A program made the translations under genes and the position numbers. The notes beneath the pieces are model-generated. The model worked only from the letters and a program-made list of their open reading frames with translations. It made no database searches and was not told the DNA's origin. This document shows positions 6,901 to 48,138 of a stretch of DNA of 64,000 nt, piece by piece. The stretch is from Macrostomum lignano (lineage: Eukaryota), in the NCBI GenBank assembly GCA_002269645.1, contig NIVC01000719.1:398243-462242 (forward strand), read 5' to 3'. Numbering within the stretch: position 1 is the first letter of the stretch; each line of letters begins with the position of its first letter.

Positions 6901-9900
6901 TGAGAGTGCTCAAATAATCTATCTATAGAGACTGAGAGTGCTCAGCTGGTCTATCTATAGGGACTGAGAGTGCTCAGATATTCTATCTATAGGGATTGAG
7001 AGTGCTCAAATAATCTATCTATAGGGATTGAGAGTGCTCAAATAATCTATCTATAGGGATTGAGAGTGCTCAGCTGGTCTATCTACAGGAGTTGAGAGTG
7101 CTCAAATAATCTATCTATAGGGATTGAGAGTGCTCAAATAATCTATCTATAGGGATTGAGAGTGCTCAAATAATCTATCTATAGGGATTGAGAGTGCTCA
7201 GCTGGTCTATCTACAGGAGTTGAGAGTGCTCAAATAATCTATCTATAGGGATTGAGAGTGCTCAAATAATCTATCTATAGAGACTGAGAGTGCTCAGCTG
7301 GTCTATCTATAGGGACTGAGAGTGCTCAGATATTCTATCTATAGGGATTGAGAGTGCTCAAATAATCTATCTATAGGGATTGAGAGTGCTCAAATAATCT
7401 ATCTATAGGGATTGAGAGTGCTCAGCTGGTCTATCTACAGGAGTTGAGAGTGCTCAAATAATCTATCTATAGGGATTGAGAGTGCTCATATAATCTATCT
7501 ATAGAGACTGAGAGTGCTCAGCTGGTCTATCTATAGGGACTGAGAGTGCTCAGATAGTCTATCTATAGGGACTAAGTGAAATGAATTCCAGCATCCCTAC
7601 AAGCCCAGGTGAACAGTTGACATACCCGCTATCAATCAGCAGCACTGTGCATGTGTCAGCTGTAGACGATCGCTGAAGCAGCCGACAGCGGTACCACAAT
7701 AGATTAGGCTTCCGAACGCAGGCCAGTACGGTCGGAGGCGCATCCGGTGGCAGCGGTCTCGGCGCTGAGTTATTGTTGCGCGGCGAAAATCTAGCTAATA
7801 AATGATTGAGCTCAGTCGCGGCCGCTCGGCCAATGTCATTCTCAGGCCGGATGTAGAACAGGCCGGGATTAACTATGCTAGTGACTGTACAGGCGGCATG
7901 ATCCAGCTTGCCAGTGAGGACTAGTTTAGCTAGCCAGGGCTCCAGCAGTTGGTAGTTCTCGCTGATTGGCTCAACATCCACTGACGGCGCGGCTGCTGGC
8001 GTGCTCGATCGCGAGTCGGACACATTCGAATCCGACGTCGTCGAATTTGCCGACGCTCTGGCCGCGGCTTTGACGCGACTGCCTCGGGTAGCCGGCTGGG
8101 CTCGCGGCAGCACCGTTACCTCGCCCGTGCTCTCGTTTAAACGGACAAATCGGGACCTGACAGGCACCGGAGCCTCCTTAACTAGCCTGGCCAAGGCGTC
8201 AGCCGGCATGTCCGAGTAGACACCCTCATCGTATAGGCGAACATTTAGGCACACAGGCGTGTTGAGCTCGTACACGCCAACCGGAACTGTGGGCAAGCCG
8301 TCGCTGTTCGGGTCCACCGTACTCGGCGTATCCATGCAGAGAAAGTTGAATACATGGGACTGTTGCAGCATGTCTTTCAGCTGCTTCTGGCGGTACCTGC
8401 GATGGGAATGTAGCTAAGTAATGACTACCTGTGCACTAATTAATGGCAGGCTGCCCCACCTGTATAATACTGACTGGCAGGCTGCCCTACCTGTATAATA
8501 CTGACTGGCAGGCTGCCCTACCTGTATAATACTGACTGGCAGGCTGCCCTACCTGTATAATACTGACTGGCAGGCTGCCCTACCTGTATAATACTGACTG
8601 GCAGGCTGCCCTACCTGTATAATACTGACTGGCAGGCTGCCCCACCTGTATAATACTGACTGGCAGGCTGCCCTACCTGTATAATACTGACTGGCAGGCT
8701 GCCCTACCTGTATAATACTGACTGGTAGGCTGCCCTACCTGTATAATACTGACTGGCAGGCTGCCCCACCTGTATAATACTGACTGGCAGGCTGCCCCAC
8801 CTGTATAATACTGACTGGTAGGCTGCCCAACCTGTATAATACTGACTGGCAGGCTGCCCTACCTGTATAATACTGACTGGCAGGCTGCCCCACCTGTATA
8901 ATACTGACTGGCAGGCTGCCCCACCTGTATAATACTGACTGGTAGGCTGCCCAACCTGTATAATACTGACTGGCAGGCTGCCCTACCTGTATAATACTGA
9001 CTGGCAGGCTGCCCCACCTGTATAATACTGACTGGCAGGCTGCCCCACCTGTATAATACTGACTGGCAGGCTGCCCCACCTTTATAAATGACTGACAGGT
9101 GGGTGGCTGCCCCACCACAACACATTTAGCCCAATCAACAGGCACAGCGAGCAGCCTAACCAGCCTGCCTCACACTGTCGGGTGCATGCATATACTCACT
9201 TCATCCTGGGCGATTGGTCGCCGGCAGACACGCCGTACATTGAGCAACGCCAGCACATGGAGTGAGGCTGATAAAATCGCTTTGTAAGATATTTTATAAA
9301 CTGATTGTCTTTGTGCACCTCTCTGTTGCCATAGTCGGTAAATAGCACGGAGATGCCATCAGGCGAGTAGGACTCAATAACGCCGCGGTACCAGTTGCAA
9401 TCGACGGAATACCTGGCCGCAACAGGCAGGTTGGCTACCGGGTGCTGGACAGTGTAGTCGCCAATTTTATCTTCGTTGCAAAACGACTGCGTGCAAAGGT
9501 AAAACAAAAATTGGTAATGCGAGATTTTCTGTTTTTATTCTGGGACACACACCAGCGGGACACACACTGGCAGTAAACACACCAGCGGGAAACACACCAG
9601 CGGGACACACACCAGCGGGACACACACTGGCAGTAAACACACCAGCGGGAAACACACCAGCGGGACACACACCAGCGGGACACACACCAGCGGGAAACAC
9701 ACCAGCGGGACACACACCAGCGGGAAACACACCAGCGGGACACACACCAGCGGGAAACACACCAGCGGGACACACACCAGCGGGACACACACCAGCGGGA
9801 CACACACCAGCGGGAAACACACCAGCGGGACACACACCAGCGGGACACACACCAGCGGGACACACACCAGCGGGACACACACCAGCGGGACACACACCAG

Positions 9901-12900
9901 CGGGAAACACACCAGCGGGACACACACCAGCGGGACACACACCAGCGGGAAACACACCAGCGGGACACACACCAGCGGGACACACACCAGCGGGACACAC
10001 ACCAGCGGGACACACACCAGCGGGACACACACCAGCGGGACACACACCAGCGGGAAACACACCAGCGGGACACACACCAGCGGGACACACACCAGCGGGA
10101 AACACACCAGCGGGACACACACCAGCGGGACACACACCAGCGGGAAACACACCAGCGGGACACACACCAGCGGGAAACACACCAGCGGGAAACACACCAG
10201 CGGGAAACACACCAGCGGGAAACACACCAGCGGGAAACACCAGCAAAAAGCCTCCTGTTCCCAGTAAAATTAAAACAAGCAAAGGAGAAACGGCTTGCTA
10301 CCCATAGCATTGAGAAAACCGATAGAGCAGACTTACCTGCAGAGCCTGCTGCATCTCCTCAAACACGTCCATATCGGCGCCCTGGTTGCAGCGGAACACG
10401 TAAAACTCGTCGGGCGAATAGAATGCCGAAACGCTGCCAAAGAATCGATAACCCTTGAAAATATTTGACGACCTTAAAAACAGCCTGGGCGCCTCGGTAT
10501 CAACTAAATCGTTGGAAGCCTCCCGATTGTGCAAATAGGGCATAGCATAGCAGGCCAAATTGGCAAACACTAGCAGTTCGCGTACGGACAGAAATCTCAG
10601 ATCGCAATCGTGCAATACTACTCGAATTAGTAGATCAACAAGAGTCTCGCCAGGCTGCTGAGACACAATTCGAACTATAAGATCGCCAGTGAAGCATTTC
10701 TTAACTAGAATCTCCTGCAGTTCGTACACAGCCTCGGTACTCCATTGGTCAGGCTGTTGCTGACTAGTTGGCCCATTATTCATAACTCTGGGCGCTATGT
10801 TATTCAGGCTGATCCGATGAGCAAGAGGTGGAATCTCGCATAGCGCTGGCGGCATAGTCAACAGTTCAGCAATCTGCTTATTGCTGACTGAATTGCCATA
10901 GTCGGGAAAGAACACATCGCACACAGCTGATTCAATATTTAGCTTAGTAACAATAGCTCGGCACCAGTCTGAGGCGCTCTGGAACCGGCTGAGTACCCAA
11001 TCGCCTGATTGCACAGTTTCAGTCTGTACTGCCAACTGAGACTTGGCCGCCTGGCTGCACAACTGTTGAGTTCGTTTTAGCCAGGCCTGCTCAGCGTACC
11101 TCGCTACCCAGATCTCGCGCGGAGACAATAGGAATAGCGGAATAACAGCGTCGCCGGTTGATAGCGGCACAGGCATTGTTGTTGGCGCAGCGGAATCGGC
11201 CTCTTCGGCAACAACAGCCGCTTTAGGCAAAGGATTCGACAACGACTCCTGTTGCACACTCGGCTGCTCCAACAGGCCCGAGTCGCAAAATATACCAGCG
11301 GGAGAATTGGCTAGCAGGTGTTCAATGCCCGGCTCCAGGCTGGCTGGCGGGCAGGCTTGGAGTCGGGCCGGGCTGGCGATGCTAAAGTGCGCCAGATCAA
11401 ACGGCTGCGTGTCGGAGCGGCGGCACAACTGCGGCATTGACGCCGCTGCCGAGGCGCCGGCTGATGAAACTGCAGTGACATTTGGCGGCAGCACACAGAC
11501 AGGCTGGTTGGTGAGGCTGCTCAGCAGCTGCAGCAGCCTGGCATAGTCGAACGGTTTCACCGGGCACCAGCGAGCGATGGCGTCGCTGCCAGCCGAGCGA
11601 AGAGCCTTCAACGACAGTGATAACGGCAGAAGCCAGTCAGCGCAGCGACGCAGCTCGGCCAACAATTGTTCGCTCTGCTGCGCTAGCGGGCGAGCACGCC
11701 GGACTGGCGCAGCCGGCAGACGGCGTCATTTTCGGCGCTAATTAGGCGCGCGTATAGGATAGAGAAATCCGCGCGAACCTCCGACTGCAGACTGCTGGTG
11801 GTCTCGGATTCGAGCCTAGGGAGTTGAGGCAGTGTGAATCGCAATTTTTACAGAACTTAGGACATTATAGTCTGTCACGCCTATGTGATACAAGCTACCC
11901 ACCACCCCAATTCAAGCCGCCACCCACCACCCCTTTTCAAGCCGCCACCCACCACCCCAATTCAAGCCGCCACCCACCACCCCACTTCAAGCCGCCACCC
12001 ACCACCCCACTTCAAGCCGCCACCCACCACCCCACTTCAAGCCGCCACCCACCACCCCACTTCAAGCCGCCACCCCATTTCAAGCCACCACCCACCACCC
12101 CATTTCTAGCCGCCACCCACCACCCCATTTCAAGCCATCACCTACCAATAAAACCAGATGAAAACACCGCTTACAATTAATTAACAATAAATATTCTTAC
12201 CTGGCCGTCTCACTCAGCAGTGTTTGCTCGCTTTCAACCAGCCGATTGGCCAGACTCTCCAGCGAATCGGCGATGCTCAGAAGCCACCTTAGCAGTCGCA
12301 TATTTGCCTGTCCAAATTCGCAGGTAGAATGGTCGGCATGCTCAGACGATTGCTGACAGGCTGAGCAGATCAGGCTGGCGCAGGTGACACAAAAAATGTT
12401 GGCCGGAACGGCGGAAGAATGCGAGACGGCGGAGCTGCAGACGGGATCCTCGGCCGGTTTCAGCAACTGCGTGGTGACAGCCGGTTCAATCTGGTGGCTG
12501 AATCCGAGCTGATTGTGAAACTGTAATGCACACAGATATATTTGAGTTCGATTGTCCTAACCAGTAAAGAGACATTAGTTTACAATTGACAGTGAGCTGG
12601 GTCAGACAGAATGGCTCACTCTGGAGACAGTGAGCTGGGTCAGACAGAATGGCTCACTCTGGAGACAGTGAGCTGGGTCAGACAGATTGGCTCACTCTGG
12701 AGACAGTGAGCTGGGTCAGACAGAATGGCTCACTCTGGAGACAGTGAGCTGGGTCAGACAGATGGGCTCACTCTGGAGACAGTGAGCTGGGTCAGACAGA
12801 TTGGCTCACTCTGGAGACAGTGAGCTGGGTCAGACAGATTGGCTCACTCTGGAGACAGTGAGCTGGGTCAGACAGATTGGCTCACTCTGGAGACAGTGAG

Positions 12901-21900: not shown

Positions 21901-24900
21901 ATTGAGACAAGTAATATAGAGGCCAACTCAATTTTCCAGTTTCAGTTGAATTCGCACATTACTGGCGGCTGACCCCTAAATGGCGACTAATGCTTTGCTT
22001 GCCGACATGTTGCATTCATGAGATAGAGATGGGATGGCTGTTTGTGAAAGTGTGAAAATGGGCAAAATTTGTGAGAATTATGCAATCATAGGCTGAATTG
22101 ACTCTGTCTATATGACACTGTCTACCTCTGTCTCTCTAGTATATGAGAATTATAAGCTTACCCTGTCATTCAGGATGGGTTTTTCTATATTTTGCATTAG
22201 GCAAATTATTCACTCTTTACTTTCTGAATTTTGGATTATAAATAATAAAACAAACAACTCTATTAATGATATCCCAAAGAAAAGGCAGCATATAGCAACA
22301 ACACATGCACTAAAGTGTATTGACCACAAAACAACGGGTTTGTTGTGTATGTACATATACATGTAAATATTCAAGTAAAAGTTTTTCTGCAAATGCATAT
22401 CAAGTCAGCCATAAAATTCCGTACTGAAAAGTTTTCCAGTATAAAATAGACCTTGCATTGTGGAACCCATTTCCACTCTGGGGTGCCAATGTTTGTGTGC
22501 TGCTCAGCTTTTTTGGCGCCACTTCCCCACTTGGCACTCATCCTGTATGCTCATCCTGTGTGCTCATTCTGTGTGCTCATTCTGTGTGCTCATTCTGTGC
22601 GCTCATTCTGTGTGCTCATTCTGTGTGCTCATTCTGTGTGCTCATTCTGTGTGCTCATTCTGTGTGCTCATTCTGTGTGCTCATTCTGTGTGCTCATTCT
22701 GTGTGCACACTCTGTGCGCATTCTGTGTGCTCATTCTGTGTGCTCATTCTGTGCGCTCATTCTGTGTGCTCATTCTGTGTGCTCATTCTGTGTGCTCATT
22801 CTGTGTGCTCATTCTGTGTGCTCATTCTGTGTGCACACTCTGTGCGCATTCTGTGTGCTCATTCTGTGTGCTCATTCTGTGCGCTCATTCTGTGTGCTCA
22901 TTCTGTGCGCTCATTCTGTGCGCTCATTCTGTGTGCTCATTCTATGTGCTCATTCTGTGCGCTCATTCTGTGCGCTCATTCTGTGTGCTCATTCTGTGTG
23001 CACACTCTGTGCGCATTCTGTGTGCTCATTCTGTGTGCTCATTCTGTGCGCTCATTCTGTGTGCTCATTCTGTGCGCTCATTCTGTGTGCTCATTCTGTG
23101 TGCTCATTCTGTGTGCACACTCTGTGCGCATTCTGTGTGCTCATTCTGTGTGCTCATTCTGTGCGCTCATTCTGTGTGCTCATTCTGTGCGCTCATTCTG
23201 TGCGCTCATTCTGTGTGCTCATTCTGTGCGCTCATTCTGTGCGCTCATTCTGTGTGCTCATTCTGTGCGCTCATTCTGTGTGCTCATTCTGTGCGCTCAT
23301 TCTGTGTGCACACTCTGTGCGCATTCTGTGTGCTCATTCTGTGTGCTCATTCTGTGTGCACACTCTGTGCGCATTCTGTGTGCTCATTCTGTGTGCTCAT
23401 TCTGTGCTCAAATGTTAAAACTACACTCATTGAAATAATTTCTCGGCTCCATCTCTGTTCGTCTGTTTCTGTATTTTGACTCATTATCTTTGTCTTGACC
23501 CGTTTCTCCCAGTTTCCCCGCCTCATCCGGTTTCAACTGACTTTATCCCCATGATTTCTTCTAGACTCAATAGGGCCTATCAGATTCGCAAAATAGTTTA
23601 GTCTTTTCCTTCTCTCAGAATTTCGAGACGGATGATCTCAAGGGACGAAAAGGGAACAATAAGGCCCTACTGCCAATGACAAGCACCAGCGTCTTACTAT
23701 TGGCTAGCACTGGGTCGCACATTATACTTGCGACCTATCCACGAGTTTGGATGAACTCCCAATCCCATTTTTAACCTGTTGTGGAAAAAAACAGCTTGCC
23801 ATCGCCATTTTCATAACCCATAATCAACTCTTTTGGTTCTGATAATAAGAAATACCAACTAAAGCGTATATTCAAATTAACTAGGCCTAATTAACAGCTT
23901 GCCAACAATGGCAAAACCACAGCAATCAAAAGGCAAAAAGCCGGATTTGGAATCCGCAGTTCAAAGTGTGCTGCAACGTATTCGGAGTGGGTTAGACGGT
24001 GACTACCGCAATGTTGCCGATTCTTTCGGCGTTTCAAGATCGACACTGTTTGATCGCGTTCGAAAATTAATGAATGGCGAAAAGCCAAGAAAAAGAAATG
24101 ACTGTAAGCGCTACTTTACAGAGGCAGAAGAACGCCTTTTTTCTGACGCCATACAGCAGGCGGCCGTGCAGCAGCTTCCAGTTTCGAGAAAGTTGCTGCT
24201 GCAAATGGCGTCGGATGCTGTCTGCAATTTCGCCAGCAAGGAAGGCAGGAGCGGCTTGCGCCATGTCCAGGCAAGAATATTTATAAATAAATTTTATTGA
24301 AAAGAGCGAGATCTCAAATCTGCTTTTACCCTTACGGTAATAGGACAGCAATAATAGGACCGCTGTCTGACCCAGTTCTCCCGCTGCCTGACCCAGTTCT
24401 CCCGCTGCCTGACCCAGTTCTCCCGCTGCCTGACCCAGTTCTCCCGCTGCCTGACCCAGTTCTCCCGCTGCCTGACCCAGTTCTCCCGCTGCCTGACCCA
24501 GTTCTCCCGCTGCCTGACCCAGTTCTCCCGCTGCCTGACCCAGTTCTCCCGCTGCCTTGCCTAGTTTTCCCGCTGCCTGACCCAGTTCTCCCGCTGCCTG
24601 ACCCAGTTCTCCCGCTGCCTTGCCTAGTTTTCCCGCTGCCTGACCCAGTTCCCCTCCGGTTCCCCTCCGGTTCCCCTCCGGTTCCCCTCCGGTTCCCCTC
24701 CGGTTCCCCTCCGGTTCCCCTCCGGTTCCCCTCCGGTTCCCCTCCGGTTCCCCTCCGGTTCCCCTCCGGTTCCCCTCCGGTTCCCCTCCGGTTCCCCTCC
24801 GGTTCCCCTCCGGTTCCCCTCCGGTTCCCCTCCGGTTCCCCTCCGGTTCCCCTCCGGTTCCCCTCCGGTTCCCCTCCGGTTCCCCTCCGGTTCCCCTCCG

Positions 24901-27900
24901 GTTCCCCTCCGGTTCCCCTCCGGTTCCCCTCCGGTTCCCCTCCGGTTCCCCTCCGGTTCCCCTCCGGTTCCCCTCCGGTTCCCCTCCGGTTCTCCTCCGG
25001 TTCCCCTCCGGTTCCCCTCCGGTTCCCCTCCGGTTCCCCTCCGGTTCCTCTCGTATTGCATTTAGTATTTAGTATTGCAATAATTTTAATAATTTTAGTA
25101 TTGCATTGTATTTGTCCTTTTGAGTTATTATTCATTTTCCTATTCCCAGGCTGACACTGTGACGCGAGGCTGGGTTGACAGCTTTCTTAAAAGACATCCA
25201 GAGCTTGCGTTGCGTATTCCTCAGGCTGTGAATCCTGGTCGGACAGTCGTCACAGAGGTCAGAATCCGCAACTGGTTTGAGGCGCTCGCTGCGTTTGAGA
25301 TGGATGAGCTACTTGACGGAGCGCTGCAGGATCCTGAGAGAATTTTTAACTGTGACGAAATCGCTGTTCCTCAGGGAATAAAGTCGCAAGCCGTTTTAGC
25401 ACCGAAAGGAATGCTTAATGTCGTTCAAAAGGTACATGGCAGTGATCGAAAGTTTACAACCGTTCTAGTCGCTGTTCAATGCGCAGGAAAGCTTCTGCCG
25501 CCTCGATTCGTTTTTCCTGGAAAAATTCAGCAGCGAACAGACCACTTGCCGCCGGACTGCCACTACAGTTTTTCGCCGAACGGCTGGATGACTACCTCTG
25601 GATTCGAGACTTTCATCCGCGAGACGTTTGTTCCATTTCTTGATGAAGAGAAAGTGCGCCGCCCGGTGGTTCTGTTTACGGATCTTCACGAATCTCGACT
25701 ATCTGTTGAGCTGCTGGAATATCTGCGTGAACAGAAGGTGGTTCTCTATGGGCTAGTTCCAAACGCGACGCACGTTATGCAGCCGCTCGACCTTGCCGTT
25801 TTTCGCCCAGTCAAGTGCGGGTGGCGAGAACTTCTTGCTGACAGATCACAGCAGGCTGCATTCGGCGGCAGCATCAGTCGGCAGCAGTTTGTGCACTTAT
25901 TTCGCGACGTGCTTCAACGAAAGGCAAACGCGTGCAACATTGCGGCTGGTTTCCGAAAGAGCGGAATATTTCCAAGAAATCCGGACGCACCACCATACGA
26001 CAAGTTACTAAAGAGAGTCGACATATCAAAAAGCGGTGGTGTCACGCCGAACAACGAGCTATCATCTGGCAACGAGGAGCAGCTGAAAACGACTCCTAAA
26101 GCAGAAAAAACTTGTCAGACTGTTAGTGGATCAGTGGAGCAGTGCTTTGAGCGAGTTTTCGGCACAGAAAAGCTGTTTCAGCTGCAAACTCAGCCGCCTG
26201 TCTCTGCAGAAGATCGAAGGCTTCAGCAACTTTTCTGGCTGCTGTCAGGCAACGTAAGGGCGGACAGGCCATGTGATAACCACATCGCAAGCTCTGGTGA
26301 CACAGTGGAGAGCCTTCTGGGAAGCCTGCCGTCTTCGCCGTCTCCCGGCAGCAGCCCGCCGCCTCGCGACAGCAGCCCGGCGCCTCTCGGCAGCAGCCCG
26401 CCGCCTCGCGACAGCAGCCCGGCGCCTCCCGGCAGCAGCCCGCCGCCTCGCGACAGCAGCCCGGCGCCTCCCAGCAGCAGCCCGGCGCCTCCCGGCAGCA
26501 GCCCGCCGCCTCGCGACAGCAGCCCGGCGCCTCCCGGCAGCAGCCCGCCGCCTCGCGACAGCAGCCCGGCGCCTCCCGGCAGCAGCCCGCCGCCTCGCGA
26601 CAGCAGCCCGCCGCCTCGCGACAGCAGCCTGGCGCCTCCCGGCAGCAGCCCGCCGCCTCGCGACAGCAGCCCGGCGCCTCCCGGCAGCAGCCCGCCGCCT
26701 CGCGACAGCAGCCCGCCGCCTCGCGACAGCAGCCCGCCGCCTCGCGACAGCAGCCCGGCGCCTCCCGGCAGCAGCCCGCCGCCTCGCGACAGCAGCCCGA
26801 CGCCTCCCGGCAGCAGCCCGCCGCCTCGCGACAGCAGCCCGGCGCCTCCCGGCAGCAGCCCGCCGCCTCGCGACAGCAGCCCGCCGCCTCGCGACAGCAG
26901 CCCGGCGCCTCCCGGCAGCAGCCCGGCGCCTCCCGGCAGCAGCCCGCCGCCTCGCGACAGCAGCCCGCCGCCTCGCGACAGCAGCCCGGCGCCTCCCGGC
27001 AGCAGCCCGGCGCCTCCCGGCAGCAGCCCGGCGTCTGACTGTTTCACTGAGGCCACAATCGCAATGTGTGATTCAGATGTGGATTCTGAGCCACCCTCAG
27101 GTAAGAATTTTTATTAAATTTCTTCTGCCTGGCTTTGCTTCGGACATAGACGGGTTTTTATTGGTAGAGCTTCTTACGCTCGTAGCTTTGTCTAATCGCG
27201 TGTATTTAAAGGCTCATAATCCGACTTAACATTCTGTCATGAGAAGGGAACTGCGAGCAGATTCCCCCTGAAATAATCTGCTTACTTTTATTACAAGACT
27301 AGAATTTTAGCAAAGATCTTTTCCCTCAGAGCTGTCCGCGGCTGGGACTCGTGGGTCATTGAGTGCACTCCTGCTTTATTTATGTAATTGACTCACTCGT
27401 ACGTATTATGCCTAAAGACAGCTTCAAACAGCCTTAAAGACTGTCGCAGATTTTTTCGGGCAATGATATTCGTATTGGAGTAAGCAAATCTTAATTAGAG
27501 CTAGATGTTTGCTCTTCCTAATTCAACAGATTCGTTCTGTCCTGTCGAATCTATCTCAGCTGCGGCGGCGGCTGCAGTTTCTTCTTTCGTTCTACCTGTG
27601 AACAGAAAGAGGAAGGCAGCAGAGGAGGCCTCAAGTTCGAAAAGAGGCAAATCGACTTGCCAGGACCTGCCGGACTCCAACCTCACAAGCCTGTCAACGC
27701 TGTCCTTTTTACGCAACAAGGCCAACAACCGGCGAGCACTGGCTGATGCCAAGAAGATGCGTGTAGCGAAACGTCAGCTCAACGCGCAGAAAAAAAATAC
27801 CAAATGGGCAACCCAGCAGAAAAAAATTGCTGAGCGAATGAAAGCCGGTGAATCTGCAAAGCAGGTCTCTCAAAGTGCATACACCGCTAAATTGAAGGCA

Positions 27901-30900
27901 AAAGCAAGTTCCTTGGATTGCATCCTCGGCCAAACAAAATCCTTTGGCGACTGCTTTTTTGAGTCAATCGCTCAGTTGCTGCAGAACGAAGGTTCTGACG
28001 CCGATCATATGCAGCTTCGTCAGCAGTCTTGTGACTACCTGGTTGAAAATCCAGTAATCTGCGGAACGGTCTTGACCGATTTCATCGAAGGCAATGACTT
28101 CGAGAACTACATCAGCAGAATGCGCCGCTCGGGCACGTACGCCGATCACGTCGCAATAATCGGCACTGCCAATTCGCTAGGCCGAGCCATTCATATTTAT
28201 CAACCCGATAAGCCAGCGCCGGTCAAAATTACAGCTGCCAGTGCAAAGCAGATGAAATCGCCACTCAAGATCGCCCACATTCCTGAGCTGCATTATCAAC
28301 CGCTTTTGCCAAATCCAAGTGCTCTGCTAGAGAATTCGACCCCAGTGCCTCTTTGCGCAGGGGACTGGGCCCTTGTCGCCGTGAAGGCCGAATTGCGCAA
28401 CAAAGCCACCTGGAAATTTTTTCCATCCCGCATCGAGCAACTCGACAGCGAACAAGCCGTAGTTTCGGCCTGCGCCATGTCCGTCTCGGAATGGATCGCA
28501 CGGGGGAGACGGCGGCCGTTTGTCTTCCCGGTCGAGGAAGATTTATTCTCCGTTCACGTGAGTGAGCTGGCCCGATTGCCAGAACCGGCTGCCGCAGCAG
28601 GACGAGCACACGGATGGCAATGGACGCTCACTGAGCTCATGGCAGCGAGAAATAAGATAAAAACTGACTAGCTTGTAGTTGACTTTTGGCTAGGCCTAAT
28701 CAGTCCGCTAGCCTTACTTTTCGCTCGACTTTTCTCTCCGCTCCCCTCTTCGTCTTAAGTGCTTAAAATTTGCACATTTTACATCGATTTGCAATTACTG
28801 TATATGATGCTCAGTCAATTTTTGGATCGTTTCATGCTTTGCCTACTACATTAGTAACTGATCTGGTCTTTTATAATAATAACTCGTGTATTTATAGTTC
28901 GTTTTAATGTTTTCTGTATTGCTGCTCGCATTTATCACTGTCCTATCATTTCTGAATCATTAAATTATGTCAACTTCCGTTGCTTTTCGCATAATTGGGT
29001 TAAATATTGTACGAGCAGTAGAGTATTGCTAACTTAATTTTTATTGATTCGAAAGAAATTAGGGGTTAACACCTCACGCACTCGCATACTCTATACACTA
29101 TAAGAGCTATAGTTGTATAGGTCCTAGTCTCCGCTTTGATCGTTATTGCATCGCTCGTGTTTTAATCAATTCGATCAATGTGTTTTGTAATGTAATAAAT
29201 TAGTAAATATAAAACCAAATAAAAGTAAAGAAATGCTTTTTCTCGTCTAATTCAGCTGTTGCTTGCCTTTAATTAACAGTTCCAATTAAATAAGTTTATG
29301 AGCAGAATCTCTTTTGAAAAGAGATTCTTTCGTTGATATCGAGTTAAATGCAGTGCACAGAAAGGAAAGTAGGGCCTATATATCAGTAATATCATTTATC
29401 AGGCGGGGAGGAGAGGGGAGACAAGGGGCAGGAGAGGAGACAAGGGGCAGGAGAGGAGACAAGGGGCAGGAGAGGAGACAAGGGGCAGGAGAGGAGACAA
29501 GGGGCAGGAGAGGAGGGGGGACAGTTTTGAAGGATGAAATTTAATTTAAAAAATTTAGTGATCGTACGAAACAAAAAACATGAAGATATCTGAGAGCACC
29601 AAAATAAGCTGCAGGGCGCTAAAAGGAGCCGCAGGCGCCGAAATAAGCTGCAGGGCGCTAAAAAGAGCCGCAGGCGCCGAAATAAGCTGCAGGGCGCTAA
29701 AAAGAGCCGCAGGGCGCTAAAAAGAGCCGCAGGGCGCTAAAAAGAGCCGCAGGCGCCGAAATAAGCTGCAGGGCGCTAAAAAGAGCCGCAGGGCGCTAAA
29801 AAGAGCCGCAGGGCGCTAAAAAGAGCCGCAGGCGCCGAAATAAGCTGCAGGGCGCTAAAAAGAGCCGCAGGGCGCCGAAATAAGCTGCAGGGCGCTAAAA
29901 AGAGCCGCAGGCGCCGAAATAAGCTGCAGGGCGCTAAAAAGAGCCGCAGGGCGCTAAAATAAGCTGCAGGGCGCCGAAATAAGCTGCAGGGCGCTAAAAA
30001 GAGCCGCAGGCGCCAAAATAAGCTGCAGGGTGCTAAAAAGAGCCGCAGGCGCCAAAAAAAGCTGCAGGGCGCTAAAAAGAGCCGCAGGCGCCGAAATAAG
30101 CTGCAGGGCGCTAAAAAGAGCCGCAGGGCGCCGAAATAAGCTGCAGGGCGCTAAAAAGAGCCGCAGGGCGCCAAAATAGGCTGCAGGGCGCTAAAAAGAG
30201 CCGCAGGGCGCTAAAAAGAGCCGCAGGGCGCTAAAAAGAGCCGCAGGGCGCCAAAATAAGCTGCAGGGCGCCAAAAAGAGCCGCAGGGCGCTAAAAAGAG
30301 CCGCAGGGCGCCAAAATAGGCTGCAGGGCGCTAAAAAGAGCCACAGGGCGCTAAAAAGAGCCGCAGGGCGCCAAAATAAGCTGCAGGGCGCCAAAAAGAG
30401 CCGCAGGGCGTCAAAATGAGTACTATAGGGCGCCTCTATGGCGCTTCTATAAAGTTCCTTCTATGGCGCTCGCGCACAAGGCGCCTCCCAAAGTGGGCCC
30501 CAAAAGGGTTCCCCAAAATAGCGCCTCTTTGTGGCGCCCCCCCCCCAATTCTTAGCCTCATTCTTCCCGAATTAAGCAAATGTCTTGATCCGCCACTGGA
30601 CAGGACATGTAATCGTACAAACAGAATTTTAATCCTGCATGCTAAGCTCTGCAATGCGCAGAGTCCCCAATCGAGAAGCTTGCTTTAATTGCACACCGTA
30701 ATATATAGCCCTACCGCCCCTACACCCTGCTGAGTTTCTAGAAGTTGGAATGGGCGAATGGCTCAGTGCCATCTGAGCGGGATATAATTGACCAAATCGC
30801 TGCCCTCTTTGCATGCTTGCGAAAACGGTTGATTTCCTGGTGTGAATTAAAGTTTGAGCTTAGCTGTAAGGGGCTATCTGTATGCGCGATTCGCACATTG

Positions 30901-37497: not shown

Positions 37498-48138
<10,641 letters not shown>

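What the first reader, a model, noticed from the sequence alone, without database searches (positions are those of the whole stretch)
23908..28671. Transposase spliced in frame to an OTU protease domain
Seen in sequence: the DDE exon ends TCA G|gtaaga at 27100. The next exon starts acag|AT TCG at 27530 in exactly the phase of the OTU ORF, so the two separate track ORFs make one 1151-aa protein. The OTU Cys (27952-27954, GDCFF) and His (28291-28293, ELHY) are retained, but Phe replaces the usual Asp three residues before the Cys. A barrel-like domain follows. Established: OTU domains are deubiquitinases and have been reported in Ginger and Dada transposons; I do not recall them fused to pogo transposases. 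Inference: the domain may protect the transpososome from ubiquitin-dependent turnover or edit host chromatin or defence proteins.
Basis: partly seen in the sequence, partly recalled or inferred. Interest (0 to 1): 0.85.

Follow-up and report, generated by a model that had tools for sequence, protein, structure and literature searches.

The report
Pogo-type transposase fused to OTU protease
A three-exon gene in a repeat-rich eukaryotic region encodes a pogo-type cut-and-paste transposase joined in one protein to an apparently intact OTU deubiquitinase domain, a combination that also occurs as a single uninterrupted reading frame in three distant relatives but that I did not find described in the literature.

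Summary
Exons 23908-24270, 25150-27100 and 27530-28671 join in frame into a stop-free 1151-aa product. Both introns have good splice signals (GC-AG and GT-AG). Exons are about 50% GC; intron 2 and the flanks are 36-41%.

The N-terminal half is a pogo-superfamily transposase: Pfam DDE_1, with an intact DD35D triad (D190, D299, D335). The C-terminal half holds a confidently modelled OTU fold (OTUD3, TM 0.83). Its Cys913 and His1026 align with the catalytic residues of OTUD5.

The fusion does not rest on predicted splicing alone. Three relatives carry DDE_1 and OTU in one continuous ORF: Logan contig L001, P0070, and P0105 on metagenomic (genomic) DNA. Between the window and L001, synonymous sites are saturated, yet the OTU and the C-terminal tail remain conserved.

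Not confirmed:
- The "barrel-like" C-terminal domain (no HMM match, no confident model).
- Terminal inverted repeats.
- Splicing, enzymatic activity and any biological role.

OTU domains are already known in Ginger1 transposases and in Helitrons. A systematic domain survey of pogo lists none. I class this as a new variant of a known kind, of moderate interest, and not the 0.85 first proposed.

The parts
23908..24270 (+). Exon 1 (121 codons): start codon in good Kozak context (acaATGg) and the N-terminal helix-turn-helix region.
   Evidence: It is colinear with L001 nt 157-~500. Weak HTH_7 and HTH_Tnp_Tc5 hits.
24271..25149 (+). Intron 1, GC-AG (CAG|gcaaga ... cccag|G), phase 0. It consists mostly of two minisatellites: a 21-mer x14 at 24360-24651 and an 11-mer x37 at 24648-25052.
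   Evidence: The Pfam HTH_Tnp_Tc5 match (aa 79-141) and the L001 alignment both run across this junction.
25150..27100 (+). Exon 2: the end of the Tc5/CENP-B-type HTH, the DDE_1 catalytic core, the linker and an in-frame minisatellite.
25447..25839 (+). Pfam DDE_1 match (aa 221-351). Catalytic Asp codons: D190 at 25354-25356, D299 at 25681-25683, D335 at 25789-25791 (DD35D).
   Evidence: 46.6 bits against a cut-off of 22. One search shows the three Asp columns aligned with 23 relatives.
26336..27030 (+). 21-nt minisatellite (about 33 copies) inside the coding exon. It is read as Ser/Pro-rich heptads (SSPPPRD / SSPAPPG) and forms a low-complexity linker of about 231 aa that L001 lacks.
   Evidence: All three frames are open here, so openness within the repeat is not evidence of coding.
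27101..27529 (+). Intron 2, GT-AG (CAG|gtaaga ... ttcctaattcaacag|A), phase 1, 429 nt, 40% GC, non-repetitive.
27530..28671 (+). Exon 3: a basic linker, the OTU domain, a conserved C-terminal tail and the stop codon.
27877..28329 (+). OTU cysteine-protease fold (aa ~888-1038). Cys913 is at 27952-27954, His1026 at 28291-28293, and the conserved Glu1024 lies two residues before the His.
   Evidence: Pfam OTU 42.7 bits against a cut-off of 23.3. AF2 pLDDT 89-98 per 10-residue block (mostly above 95) across this span. Foldseek: OTUD3 (4bou) E 7e-9, TM 0.83; also DUBA and OTUD1. Residue alignment to OTUD5.
28345..28659 (+).
   Evidence: It is 47% identical to the frame-shifted end of L001, with pN 0.40 against pS 0.72. 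It has no Pfam family and no confident model.

Best explanation
The locus is one three-exon gene for a pogo-superfamily DNA transposase. It has N-terminal helix-turn-helix DNA-binding modules and a DDE_1 RNase-H-like core with an intact DD35D triad. Its C-terminal extension carries an OTU-family cysteine isopeptidase and a short conserved tail.

Shown here: the gene structure, the identity of the domains, retention of the catalytic residues, the same domain order in single ORFs of three distant relatives, and sequence constraint on the OTU and the tail.

Inferred: that the two introns are spliced as drawn, that the OTU is an active deubiquitinase (or ubiquitin-like protease), and its role. The most likely role is to act in cis or nearby during transposition. 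It would remove ubiquitin from the transposase or from chromatin and repair factors at the excision or insertion site, stabilising the transpososome or steering repair. The same idea has been proposed for the OTU/Ulp1 domains of Ginger1 and for the deubiquitinases of Helentrons.

Whether this copy is still mobile or has become a stationary host gene is open.
For: - Gene model: 3456 nt with no stops. The splice sites rank first of 1219 in-frame alternatives, and GC content steps at every boundary.
- Domains: DDE_1 and OTU HMM hits above their curated cut-offs. D190, D299 and D335 align with the catalytic Asp columns of relatives.
- OTU fold: pLDDT 89-98 per 10-residue block, matching OTUD3, DUBA and OTUD1. 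Cys913 and His1026 align to the OTUD5 catalytic residues.
- L001: this 3191-bp contig from another sample is colinear with aa 10-1146 and has no introns. Identity is 51% over the transposase, 39% over linker plus OTU, and 47% over the tail. Its 644-aa ORF P0001 contains DDE_1 and OTU together.
- Further relatives: P0070 (HTH_psq, HTH_Tnp_Tc5, DDE_1, OTU) and P0105 (DDE_1, OTU) are single ORFs. P0105 lies on metagenomic, that is genomic, DNA.
- Constraint, window against L001: synonymous differences are saturated (pS 0.72-0.87). Non-synonymous differences are 0.21 in DDE, 0.39 in OTU, 0.40 in the tail and about 0.46 in the linkers.
- Start codons: the ATG at 23908 has a good Kozak context (A at -3, G at +4). 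The internal ATG at 27505 has a poor one (T at -3, T at +4).
- Published precedent: protease domains fused to transposases (PMC2836005; PMC9741609).
Against: - There are no transcript data, so splicing is predicted, not observed.
- Intron 1 uses the rare GC donor and is mostly minisatellite.
- An ATG at 27505, directly after a TAG, could start a separate OTU protein.
- No terminal inverted repeats or target-site duplication were found within about 3 kb on either side. There is no second copy in the window, so mobility is unsupported.
- The residue two positions after the catalytic His, usually Asp or Asn in OTUs, is Gln here and Met in L001. Activity is therefore not assured.
- L001 carries an in-frame stop, a frameshift and a D-to-N change at the second catalytic Asp.
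- The relatives' OTU domains are not each other's nearest neighbours. The transposase tree does not robustly unite them. A single origin of the fusion is therefore unproven.
Confidence: 0.8

Rival explanations
1. This is a domesticated, stationary host gene. A pogo-OTU transposase gene has lost its ends, gained two introns and an in-frame minisatellite, and now serves a host function, for example as a DNA-binding deubiquitinase. This rival concerns the status of the copy. It does not contradict the fusion.
For: No TIRs or TSD were found. The window holds a single copy. Two spliceosomal introns are absent from L001, P0070 and P0105. The 1151-codon ORF is intact. The P0105 locus is the same single locus in three samples, with no TIRs found there either. 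Chimeric domesticated pogo genes are known: CENPB, POGK and POGZ (PMC7386202).
Against: The DD35D triad is fully intact, which is not required of a domesticated DNA-binding protein. Copy number in the source genome could not be examined. Short pogo TIRs (40 bp or less) can escape detection without a second copy for comparison.
Confidence: 0.3
2. These are two separate products. The transposase ends at the TAA at 27115, and the OTU protein is made independently from the ATG at 27505, so the apparent splice is coincidental.
For: Both ORFs are individually bounded by stops (TAA 27115, TAG 27502), and an ATG sits at 27505 in the OTU frame. No RNA evidence is available.
Against: Three relatives have one continuous ORF through this region. 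The ATG at 27505 has a poor start context. The strongest donor in the last 1.1 kb of exon 2 lies 14 nt before the stop, and the first AG after the frame opens has a good pyrimidine tract. Intron 2 has intron-like composition.
Confidence: 0.1
3. The OTU domain is a cis-acting processing protease, as in some RNA-virus polyproteins. It would cut the long product into a transposase and a C-terminal module, and would not act on ubiquitinated substrates.
For: The protein is long, with low-complexity linkers on both sides of the OTU. That OTU-like proteases process viral polyproteins comes from my own knowledge and was not tested here.
Against: Gly-Gly sites in the window protein (for example SKSGG at about aa 417) are not conserved in L001 (by eye). 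The closest structural matches are cellular deubiquitinases.
Confidence: 0.08
4. This is a decaying pseudogene whose frame is open by chance or because the repeats lack stops.
For: The minisatellite part is open in all frames. L001 is clearly damaged.
Against: About 920 non-repeat codons contain no stop. All catalytic residues of both enzymes are kept. Non-synonymous divergence is far below saturated synonymous divergence.
Confidence: 0.04

Closest known systems
pogo superfamily transposons and transposases (Tigger, Passer, pogoR and others; Pfam DDE_1 with HTH_psq, CENP-B_N or HTH_Tnp_Tc5)
   Same: DDE_1 core, a Tc5/CENP-B-type HTH, and a DD35D spacing within the published DD29-56D range (PMC7386202). 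The nearest named relatives are annotated as tigger-derived or uncharacterized proteins of insects, Hydra and a mussel.
   Different: It carries an OTU domain and a conserved tail after the core. At 1151 aa it is longer than the published 300-977 aa range. It has the motif D-L-H-x-x-R after the second Asp, where most relatives have D-[NG]-H-S-S-H. No TIRs or TA duplication were found.
Ginger1 transposases with a C-terminal OTU or Ulp1 domain (Bao, Kapitonov and Jurka 2010; PMC2836005)
   Same: A cut-and-paste DDE transposase with an OTU protease in the same polypeptide, C-terminal to the catalytic core. Some of these genes have 1-4 introns, and they occur in aquatic invertebrates. One OTU hit here, P0043, has this rve+OTU architecture.
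   Different: The Ginger1 catalytic domain is a Gypsy-type integrase (rve, with H2C2 and GPY/F motifs), not DDE_1, so the superfamily is different. The window's OTU is not especially close to the rve-linked OTU of P0043.
Helitron and Helentron proteins with OTU and/or VTD deubiquitinase domains (PMC2836005; PMC9741609)
   Same: A transposon-encoded papain-fold deubiquitinase module. The same proposed rationale applies: protecting transposition proteins from ubiquitin-dependent turnover. The activity of transposon OTUs is reported as untested.
   Different: These are rolling-circle RepHel elements, not DDE cut-and-paste elements.
Cellular OTU deubiquitinases OTUD3, OTUD5/DUBA and OTUD1
   Same: They share the fold (TM 0.76-0.83 on the target) and aligned catalytic Cys and His.
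   Different: Sequence identity is only 15-23%. The window has Phe where they have Asp three residues before the Cys, and Gln where they have Asn or Asp two residues after the His. A Glu two residues before the His is conserved in the window's nearer relatives.

Membership tests
pogo superfamily transposase | DDE_1 catalytic domain recognised by the family HMM | tested here: met
   PF03184, 46.6 bits against a cut-off of 22, E 3.6e-12.
pogo superfamily transposase | Catalytic D-D-D triad with spacing in the family range (DD29-56D) | tested here: met
   D190, D299 and D335 give DD35D, aligned with the Asp columns of 23 relatives. The range comes from PMC7386202.
pogo superfamily transposase | N-terminal CENP-B/Tc5/psq-type helix-turn-helix DNA-binding domain | tested here: inconclusive
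   In the window, HTH_Tnp_Tc5 scores 17.0 bits, below the 22.2 cut-off. The relative P0070 passes for HTH_Tnp_Tc5 and HTH_psq. The region is colinear with L001.
pogo superfamily transposon (mobile element) | Terminal inverted repeats flanked by a TA (or TAA/TAAA) target-site duplication | tested here: not met
   No inverted repeat above chance was found within about 3 kb of the gene. The best pair (21707/30908, 21 nt, 86%) is about what chance gives. Without a second copy, short TIRs cannot be excluded.
pogo superfamily transposon (mobile element) | Multiple copies or evidence of mobility in the host genome | not testable with these tools
   The source genome is not available. The window's proteins are not in the protein collection. 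There is only one copy in the window.
OTU deubiquitinase (Pfam PF02338) | OTU family HMM match | tested here: met
   42.7 bits against a cut-off of 23.3, E 9.8e-11. There were 446 hits at E<=1e-3, and every listed hit I scanned with Pfam carries an OTU domain.
OTU deubiquitinase (Pfam PF02338) | OTU fold | tested here: met
   AF2 pLDDT of 89-98 per 10-residue block over about 150 residues. Foldseek: OTUD3 E 7.4e-9, TM 0.83, rmsd 2.3 Å.
OTU deubiquitinase (Pfam PF02338) | Catalytic Cys and His at the canonical positions | tested here: met
   Cys913 (GDC) and His1026 (HY) align to the OTUD5 Cys and His motifs. Both are conserved in L001, P0070 and P0105.
OTU deubiquitinase (Pfam PF02338) | Third catalytic residue (Asp/Asn/Glu) that orients the His, usually two residues after it | tested here: inconclusive
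   The residue at His+2 is Gln in the window and Met in L001. A Glu at His-2 is conserved in the window, in L001 and in most relatives (consensus ExHY). Whether it substitutes is unknown.
OTU deubiquitinase (Pfam PF02338) | Isopeptidase activity on ubiquitin or a ubiquitin-like modifier | not testable with these tools
   This needs an enzyme assay. PMC9741609 states that transposon OTU domains have not been tested.
Ginger1 transposon | Gypsy-type integrase (rve) catalytic domain with H2C2 and GPY/F motifs | tested here: not met
   Pfam finds DDE_1 and no rve. The locus shares only the OTU accessory-domain idea with Ginger1.

The most novel reading that the evidence does not exclude
Pogo-type transposases carrying an embedded, catalytically intact OTU deubiquitinase would form an undescribed lineage of DNA transposons (or genes derived from them) in invertebrate-like eukaryotes, kept under purifying selection. 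That would make the pogo/Tc1-mariner group one more transposon superfamily, alongside Ginger1, Helitron/Helentron and Mutator (Ulp1), to have captured a ubiquitin or ubiquitin-like protease. Such convergence would argue that ubiquitin-dependent host control of transposition proteins is general, and it would offer a compact cut-and-paste system in which to test this.
Probability: 0.45. Interest if true: 0.6.

Novelty: new variant of a known kind. Interest (0 to 1): 0.45.

Why it matters
Transposon-borne deubiquitinases have been catalogued for more than a decade, but nobody has shown what they do; PMC9741609 says the transposon OTU domains have never been assayed.

A pogo-type element is small and its mechanism is well understood. 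Close cousins such as Passer are active in cell assays (PMC9976928, seen). A pogo transposase with a built-in OTU would therefore be a convenient system for asking whether deubiquitination helps transposition. The test is to mutate one cysteine and measure the protein's stability and its excision and integration.

The finding also adds a case to the argument that different mobile elements have independently acquired ubiquitin-pathway proteases.

For annotation, it shows that an OTU ORF next to a DDE_1 ORF should be checked for splicing before the two are called as separate genes.

Tried and rejected
- **Word-index protein searches.** Exon 3 as query found nothing.
- **Exact look-up.** Neither the 1151-aa product nor the 388-aa OTU ORF is in the collection, so the source genome and its annotation were not recovered.
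- **Collection scans.** The viral scan, the metagenome scan with the window/P0001 alignment and the degenerate DNA pattern for PNATHVMQPLDLAVF found no relatives.
- **TIR and TSD search** on both flanks. Only chance-level matches appeared. An 11-nt direct repeat, CTAGGCCTAAT, lies about 20 nt outside each end of the CDS, but it is not significant (E 2.9).
- **C-terminal tail shared with an OTU-less relative.** By eye the tail resembles the C-terminus of P0013 (pattern D-W/F-x-L-V ... F-x-F-P-x-x-E-D ... G-R). This is not supported: BLASTP found nothing, hhalign gave 1.7% probability against P0013 and 0.08% against P0105, and a joint MAFFT alignment misaligned.
- **Fold of the tail.** Pfam at E<=10 gave nothing meaningful. 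AF2 scored pLDDT 36-78 in context and a mean of 43.7 alone.
- **Single origin of the fusion.** The four OTU-bearing transposases group together in only 16-25% of bootstrap trees. Their OTU domains are not mutual nearest neighbours. The question is unresolved.
- **P0105 as a multi-copy element.** The five cluster members are the same locus (99.9% identity including flanks) seen in different samples. They are not separate copies.
- **An intron donor at the end of the P0070 ORF.** I guessed at one, but the sequence shows none.
- **Organism identification.** Rfam found no families, and no paper cites SRR30276804.
- **Dada transposons with OTU.** Not verifiable in the library.
- **Other copies.** Neither intron 2 nor the flanks has another copy in the window.

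Full report

Yes. The sequence reads ...CCC TCA G|gtaagaattt at 27100/27101 and ...cctaattcaacag|AT TCG TTC at 27529/27530. Joining 23908-24270, 25150-27100 and 27530-28671 gives 3456 nt, which is 1151 codons plus a stop, with no internal stop.

It is a GC-AG intron (CAG|gcaaga ... ttcctattcccag|G, phase 0). It consists almost entirely of two minisatellites, a 21-mer x14 and an 11-mer x37.

I listed every GT/GC donor in the last 1.1 kb of the exon 2 frame and every AG after the OTU frame opens. The relevant stops are TAA at 27115 and TAG at 27502. There are 1219 in-frame pairs, and the proposed pair scores best on both sides: 8 of 9 donor consensus positions, and 11 of 15 pyrimidines before the first available AG.

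Base composition agrees with the model. Exons are 0.50-0.52 GC, intron 2 is 0.40, and the flanks are 0.41 (5') and 0.36 (3'). The start codon at 23908 has A at -3 and G at +4. The internal ATG at 27505 has T at both positions.

**2. What are the parts?**

*Transposase half.*
- Pfam finds DDE_1 (46.6 bits, cut-off 22) and a sub-threshold HTH_Tnp_Tc5 match that spans the exon 1/2 junction.
- Aligned with 23 relatives, the three catalytic Asp columns are occupied by D190, D299 and D335. That is DD35D, inside the DD29-56D range reported for pogo (PMC7386202).
- The nearest named relatives are tigger-like or uncharacterized proteins of wasps, sawflies, mosquitoes, Hydra and a mussel, at 27-36% identity.

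*Protease half.*
- Pfam finds OTU (42.7 bits, cut-off 23.3).
- An AlphaFold2 model built on 55 sequences gives pLDDT of 89-98 per 10-residue block (mostly above 95) for about 150 residues.
- Foldseek places the model on OTUD3 (E 7e-9, TM 0.83, 2.3 Å), DUBA/OTUD5, OTUD1, yeast Otu2 and nairovirus OTUs.
- HMMER aligns GD**C**FF with the OTUD5 motif DGA**C**LF, and EL**H**YQ with NI**H**YN.

*Deviations from the canonical OTU motifs.*
- Phe910 replaces the usual Asp. Among the relatives that position is G, S, N, K, A or Y, so this is ordinary variation.
- The residue two positions after the His is Gln here and Met in L001, not Asp or Asn.
- A Glu two positions before the His is conserved in this protein and in most relatives (consensus ExHY).
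- The Cys-His pair is therefore intact, but the third catalytic residue is uncertain.

*C-terminal tail.* The last 105 or so residues are conserved with L001 (47%). They match no Pfam family and gave no confident model. 'Barrel-like' cannot be confirmed.

**3. Is the fusion more than a predicted splice?**

This was the main question, and relatives answer it.

*L001.* The DDE query found P0001, a 644-aa ORF from a Logan assembly (SRR30276804). It contains both DDE_1 and OTU. Its 3191-bp contig, L001, is colinear with aa 10-1146 of the window product. Identity is 51% over the transposase, 39% over linker plus OTU, and 47% over the tail. It has no intron at either window position. It is damaged by one in-frame stop and one frameshift, and its second catalytic Asp is changed to Asn.

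*Exhaustive search.* A phmmer search of exon 3 against 1.84 billion representatives found only P0001 and P0025 (the tail ORF of L001) as close relatives. I then built a transposase HMM from the DDE hits and ran it over the 150 best OTU hits. It picked out two more fusion proteins, which Pfam confirmed:
- P0070: 838 aa, with HTH_psq, HTH_Tnp_Tc5, DDE_1 and OTU.
- P0105: 831 aa, with DDE_1 and OTU.

Each is a single ORF. P0105 lies on JGI metagenome contigs, that is on genomic DNA. In those relatives no splicing is needed to join the two enzymes.

*Sequence constraint.* Between the window and L001, synonymous differences are saturated (pS 0.72-0.87). Non-synonymous differences are 0.21 (DDE), 0.39 (OTU), 0.40 (tail) and about 0.46 (linkers). 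The OTU and the tail have therefore been kept as protein.

**4. What remains open about the element?**

- *Ends.* I found no terminal inverted repeats or target-site duplication within about 3 kb, no second copy in the window, and no relatives in the viral or metagenome scans.
- *P0105 copies.* The five members of the P0105 cluster are one locus seen in several samples, not several copies. No TIRs were found there either.
- *Status.* The copy may be an autonomous element with short, undetected ends, or a domesticated gene. The two introns, which three relatives lack, and the missing ends lean towards a stationary gene. The intact DD35D triad leans the other way.
- *One capture or several.* The four OTU-bearing transposases and Hydra P0012 share a D-L/K-H-x-x-R motif after the second Asp, where the others have D-[NG]-H-S-S-H. 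In the NJ tree they fall in one clade together with Hydra P0012. Bootstrap support for grouping the four is only 16-25%. Their OTU domains are not each other's nearest neighbours.

**5. How does it most likely work?**

*Shown.* One reading frame carries DNA-binding HTH modules, an apparently competent DDE/D nuclease-transferase core, long low-complexity linkers, an OTU fold with its Cys and His in place, and a conserved tail.

*Inferred.* The transposase part binds and cuts its element's ends. The tethered OTU removes ubiquitin or a ubiquitin-like modifier from the transposase itself or from nearby chromatin and repair proteins. This would stabilise the complex or bias repair.

The same idea was proposed for the OTU and Ulp1 domains of Ginger1 (PMC2836005) and for the deubiquitinases of Helentrons (PMC9741609). 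The latter paper notes that transposon OTU domains have never been assayed.

I put 0.8 on the single-gene fusion, roughly 0.55 on enzymatic activity, and no more than 0.25 on any specific role.

The rivals are a stationary domesticated gene (compatible with the fusion), two separate products, a self-processing protease, and a pseudogene. They are listed with their tests in the Rival explanations section.

**6. Comparison with what is known, and novelty**

OTU domains fused to transposases are established for Ginger1, whose catalytic domain is an rve integrase. They are also established in Helitron proteins. One OTU hit here, P0043, has the Ginger-like rve+OTU layout. OTU is treated as a standard accessory domain in at least one transposon-mining pipeline (PMC5751038).

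The systematic pogo survey screened transposase domains with hmmscan. It reports only DNA-binding and DDE domains, plus KRAB, ZNF and dimerisation domains in domesticated genes. The word 'protease' does not occur in it. No paper in the library combined an OTU domain with Tigger or pogo transposons.

The window gene passes the sequence tests for a pogo-type transposase and for an OTU fold. It fails the test for a demonstrable mobile element, and it is not a Ginger1 element. I class it as a new variant of a known kind. It is rare: 3 of the 150 best OTU hits and 1 of 21 DDE hits have the architecture. But it is not unique to this locus.

**7. Context**

The window is eukaryotic and unusually rich in tandem repeats: 29 arrays cover about 35% of it. 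It also holds an intact Ty3/gypsy pol ORF and two Tudor-domain ORFs.

One 21-nt minisatellite sits inside exon 2. It is read as about 33 Ser/Pro-rich heptads, a linker that L001 lacks.

I could not identify the organism. The best matches to the parts come from molluscs, an echinoderm, cnidarians and insects.

**Verdict**

The functional interpretation is untested and not new as an idea. Interest is moderate.

Noticed in passing
window 1-64000: The window is extremely dense in minisatellites and microsatellites. There are 29 merged arrays with TRF score >=300, with periods from 3 to 169 nt, covering about 35% of the window.
   Followed up: partly
window 26336-27030: A 21-nt minisatellite (about 33 copies, 83% GC) lies inside the coding exon. 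It keeps the frame and adds about 231 aa of SSPPPRD/SSPAPPG heptads between the transposase and the OTU. The relative L001 has a non-repetitive linker there.
   Followed up: partly
window 24271-25149: Intron 1 has a GC donor, and about 690 of its 879 nt are two abutting minisatellites. L001, P0070 and P0105 have no intron at this position. Both window introns therefore look lineage-specific, possibly insertions that became introns.
   Followed up: no
window 23881-23891 and 28690-28700: An 11-nt direct repeat, CTAGGCCTAAT, lies about 17 nt before the start codon and about 19 nt after the stop codon. Two further short direct repeats occur in the flanks: TAATTAACAG at 23888 and 29270, and TAGGGCCTAT at 23571 and 29370. 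Each alone is at chance level (E 2.9-11).
   Followed up: partly
window 42562-46647 (-): An uninterrupted 1361-aa Ty3/gypsy-type pol ORF with aspartyl protease, RT, RNase H, integrase zinc-binding and rve domains. The LTRs were not examined.
   Followed up: no
window 7559-8371 (-) and 10298-11665 (-): Two ORFs (270 and 455 aa) each contain a Tudor domain. They are separated by minisatellites at 8444-9099 and 9542-10244, and may be exons of one multi-Tudor gene.
   Followed up: no
L001 1-125: The relative's contig begins with about 7 tandem copies of an 18-19-nt unit (CCGTTGCTTAAYTACTTAA) directly upstream of its start codon. This hints that it comes from a similarly repeat-rich genome.
   Followed up: no
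L002/L003/L004 (P0105 locus): The alleles of this DDE_1+OTU gene differ at the first catalytic Asp of the transposase across samples. It is N136 in P0105 and D136 in the four other full-length alleles. The 3' flank carries a 357-bp unit that is repeated at least five times in L003.
   Followed up: partly
P0008 and P0017 (relatives of the DDE part): By eye, these OTU-less pogo-like proteins end in Cys/His-rich, PHD-like motifs, and P0013 has a different conserved C-terminal module. This group of transposases seems prone to acquiring C-terminal accessory domains.
   Followed up: no
P0022, P0023, P0027, P0033, P0048, P0052 (OTU relatives): The closest OTU domains outside the family sit in invertebrate multi-domain proteins: tandem OTUs (a mussel protein), kinase plus HEPN plus two OTUs (a brittle-star protein), OTU plus GT4 'conflict-system' glycosyltransferase, and LRR/Roc-COR or caspase plus OTU.
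   Followed up: no
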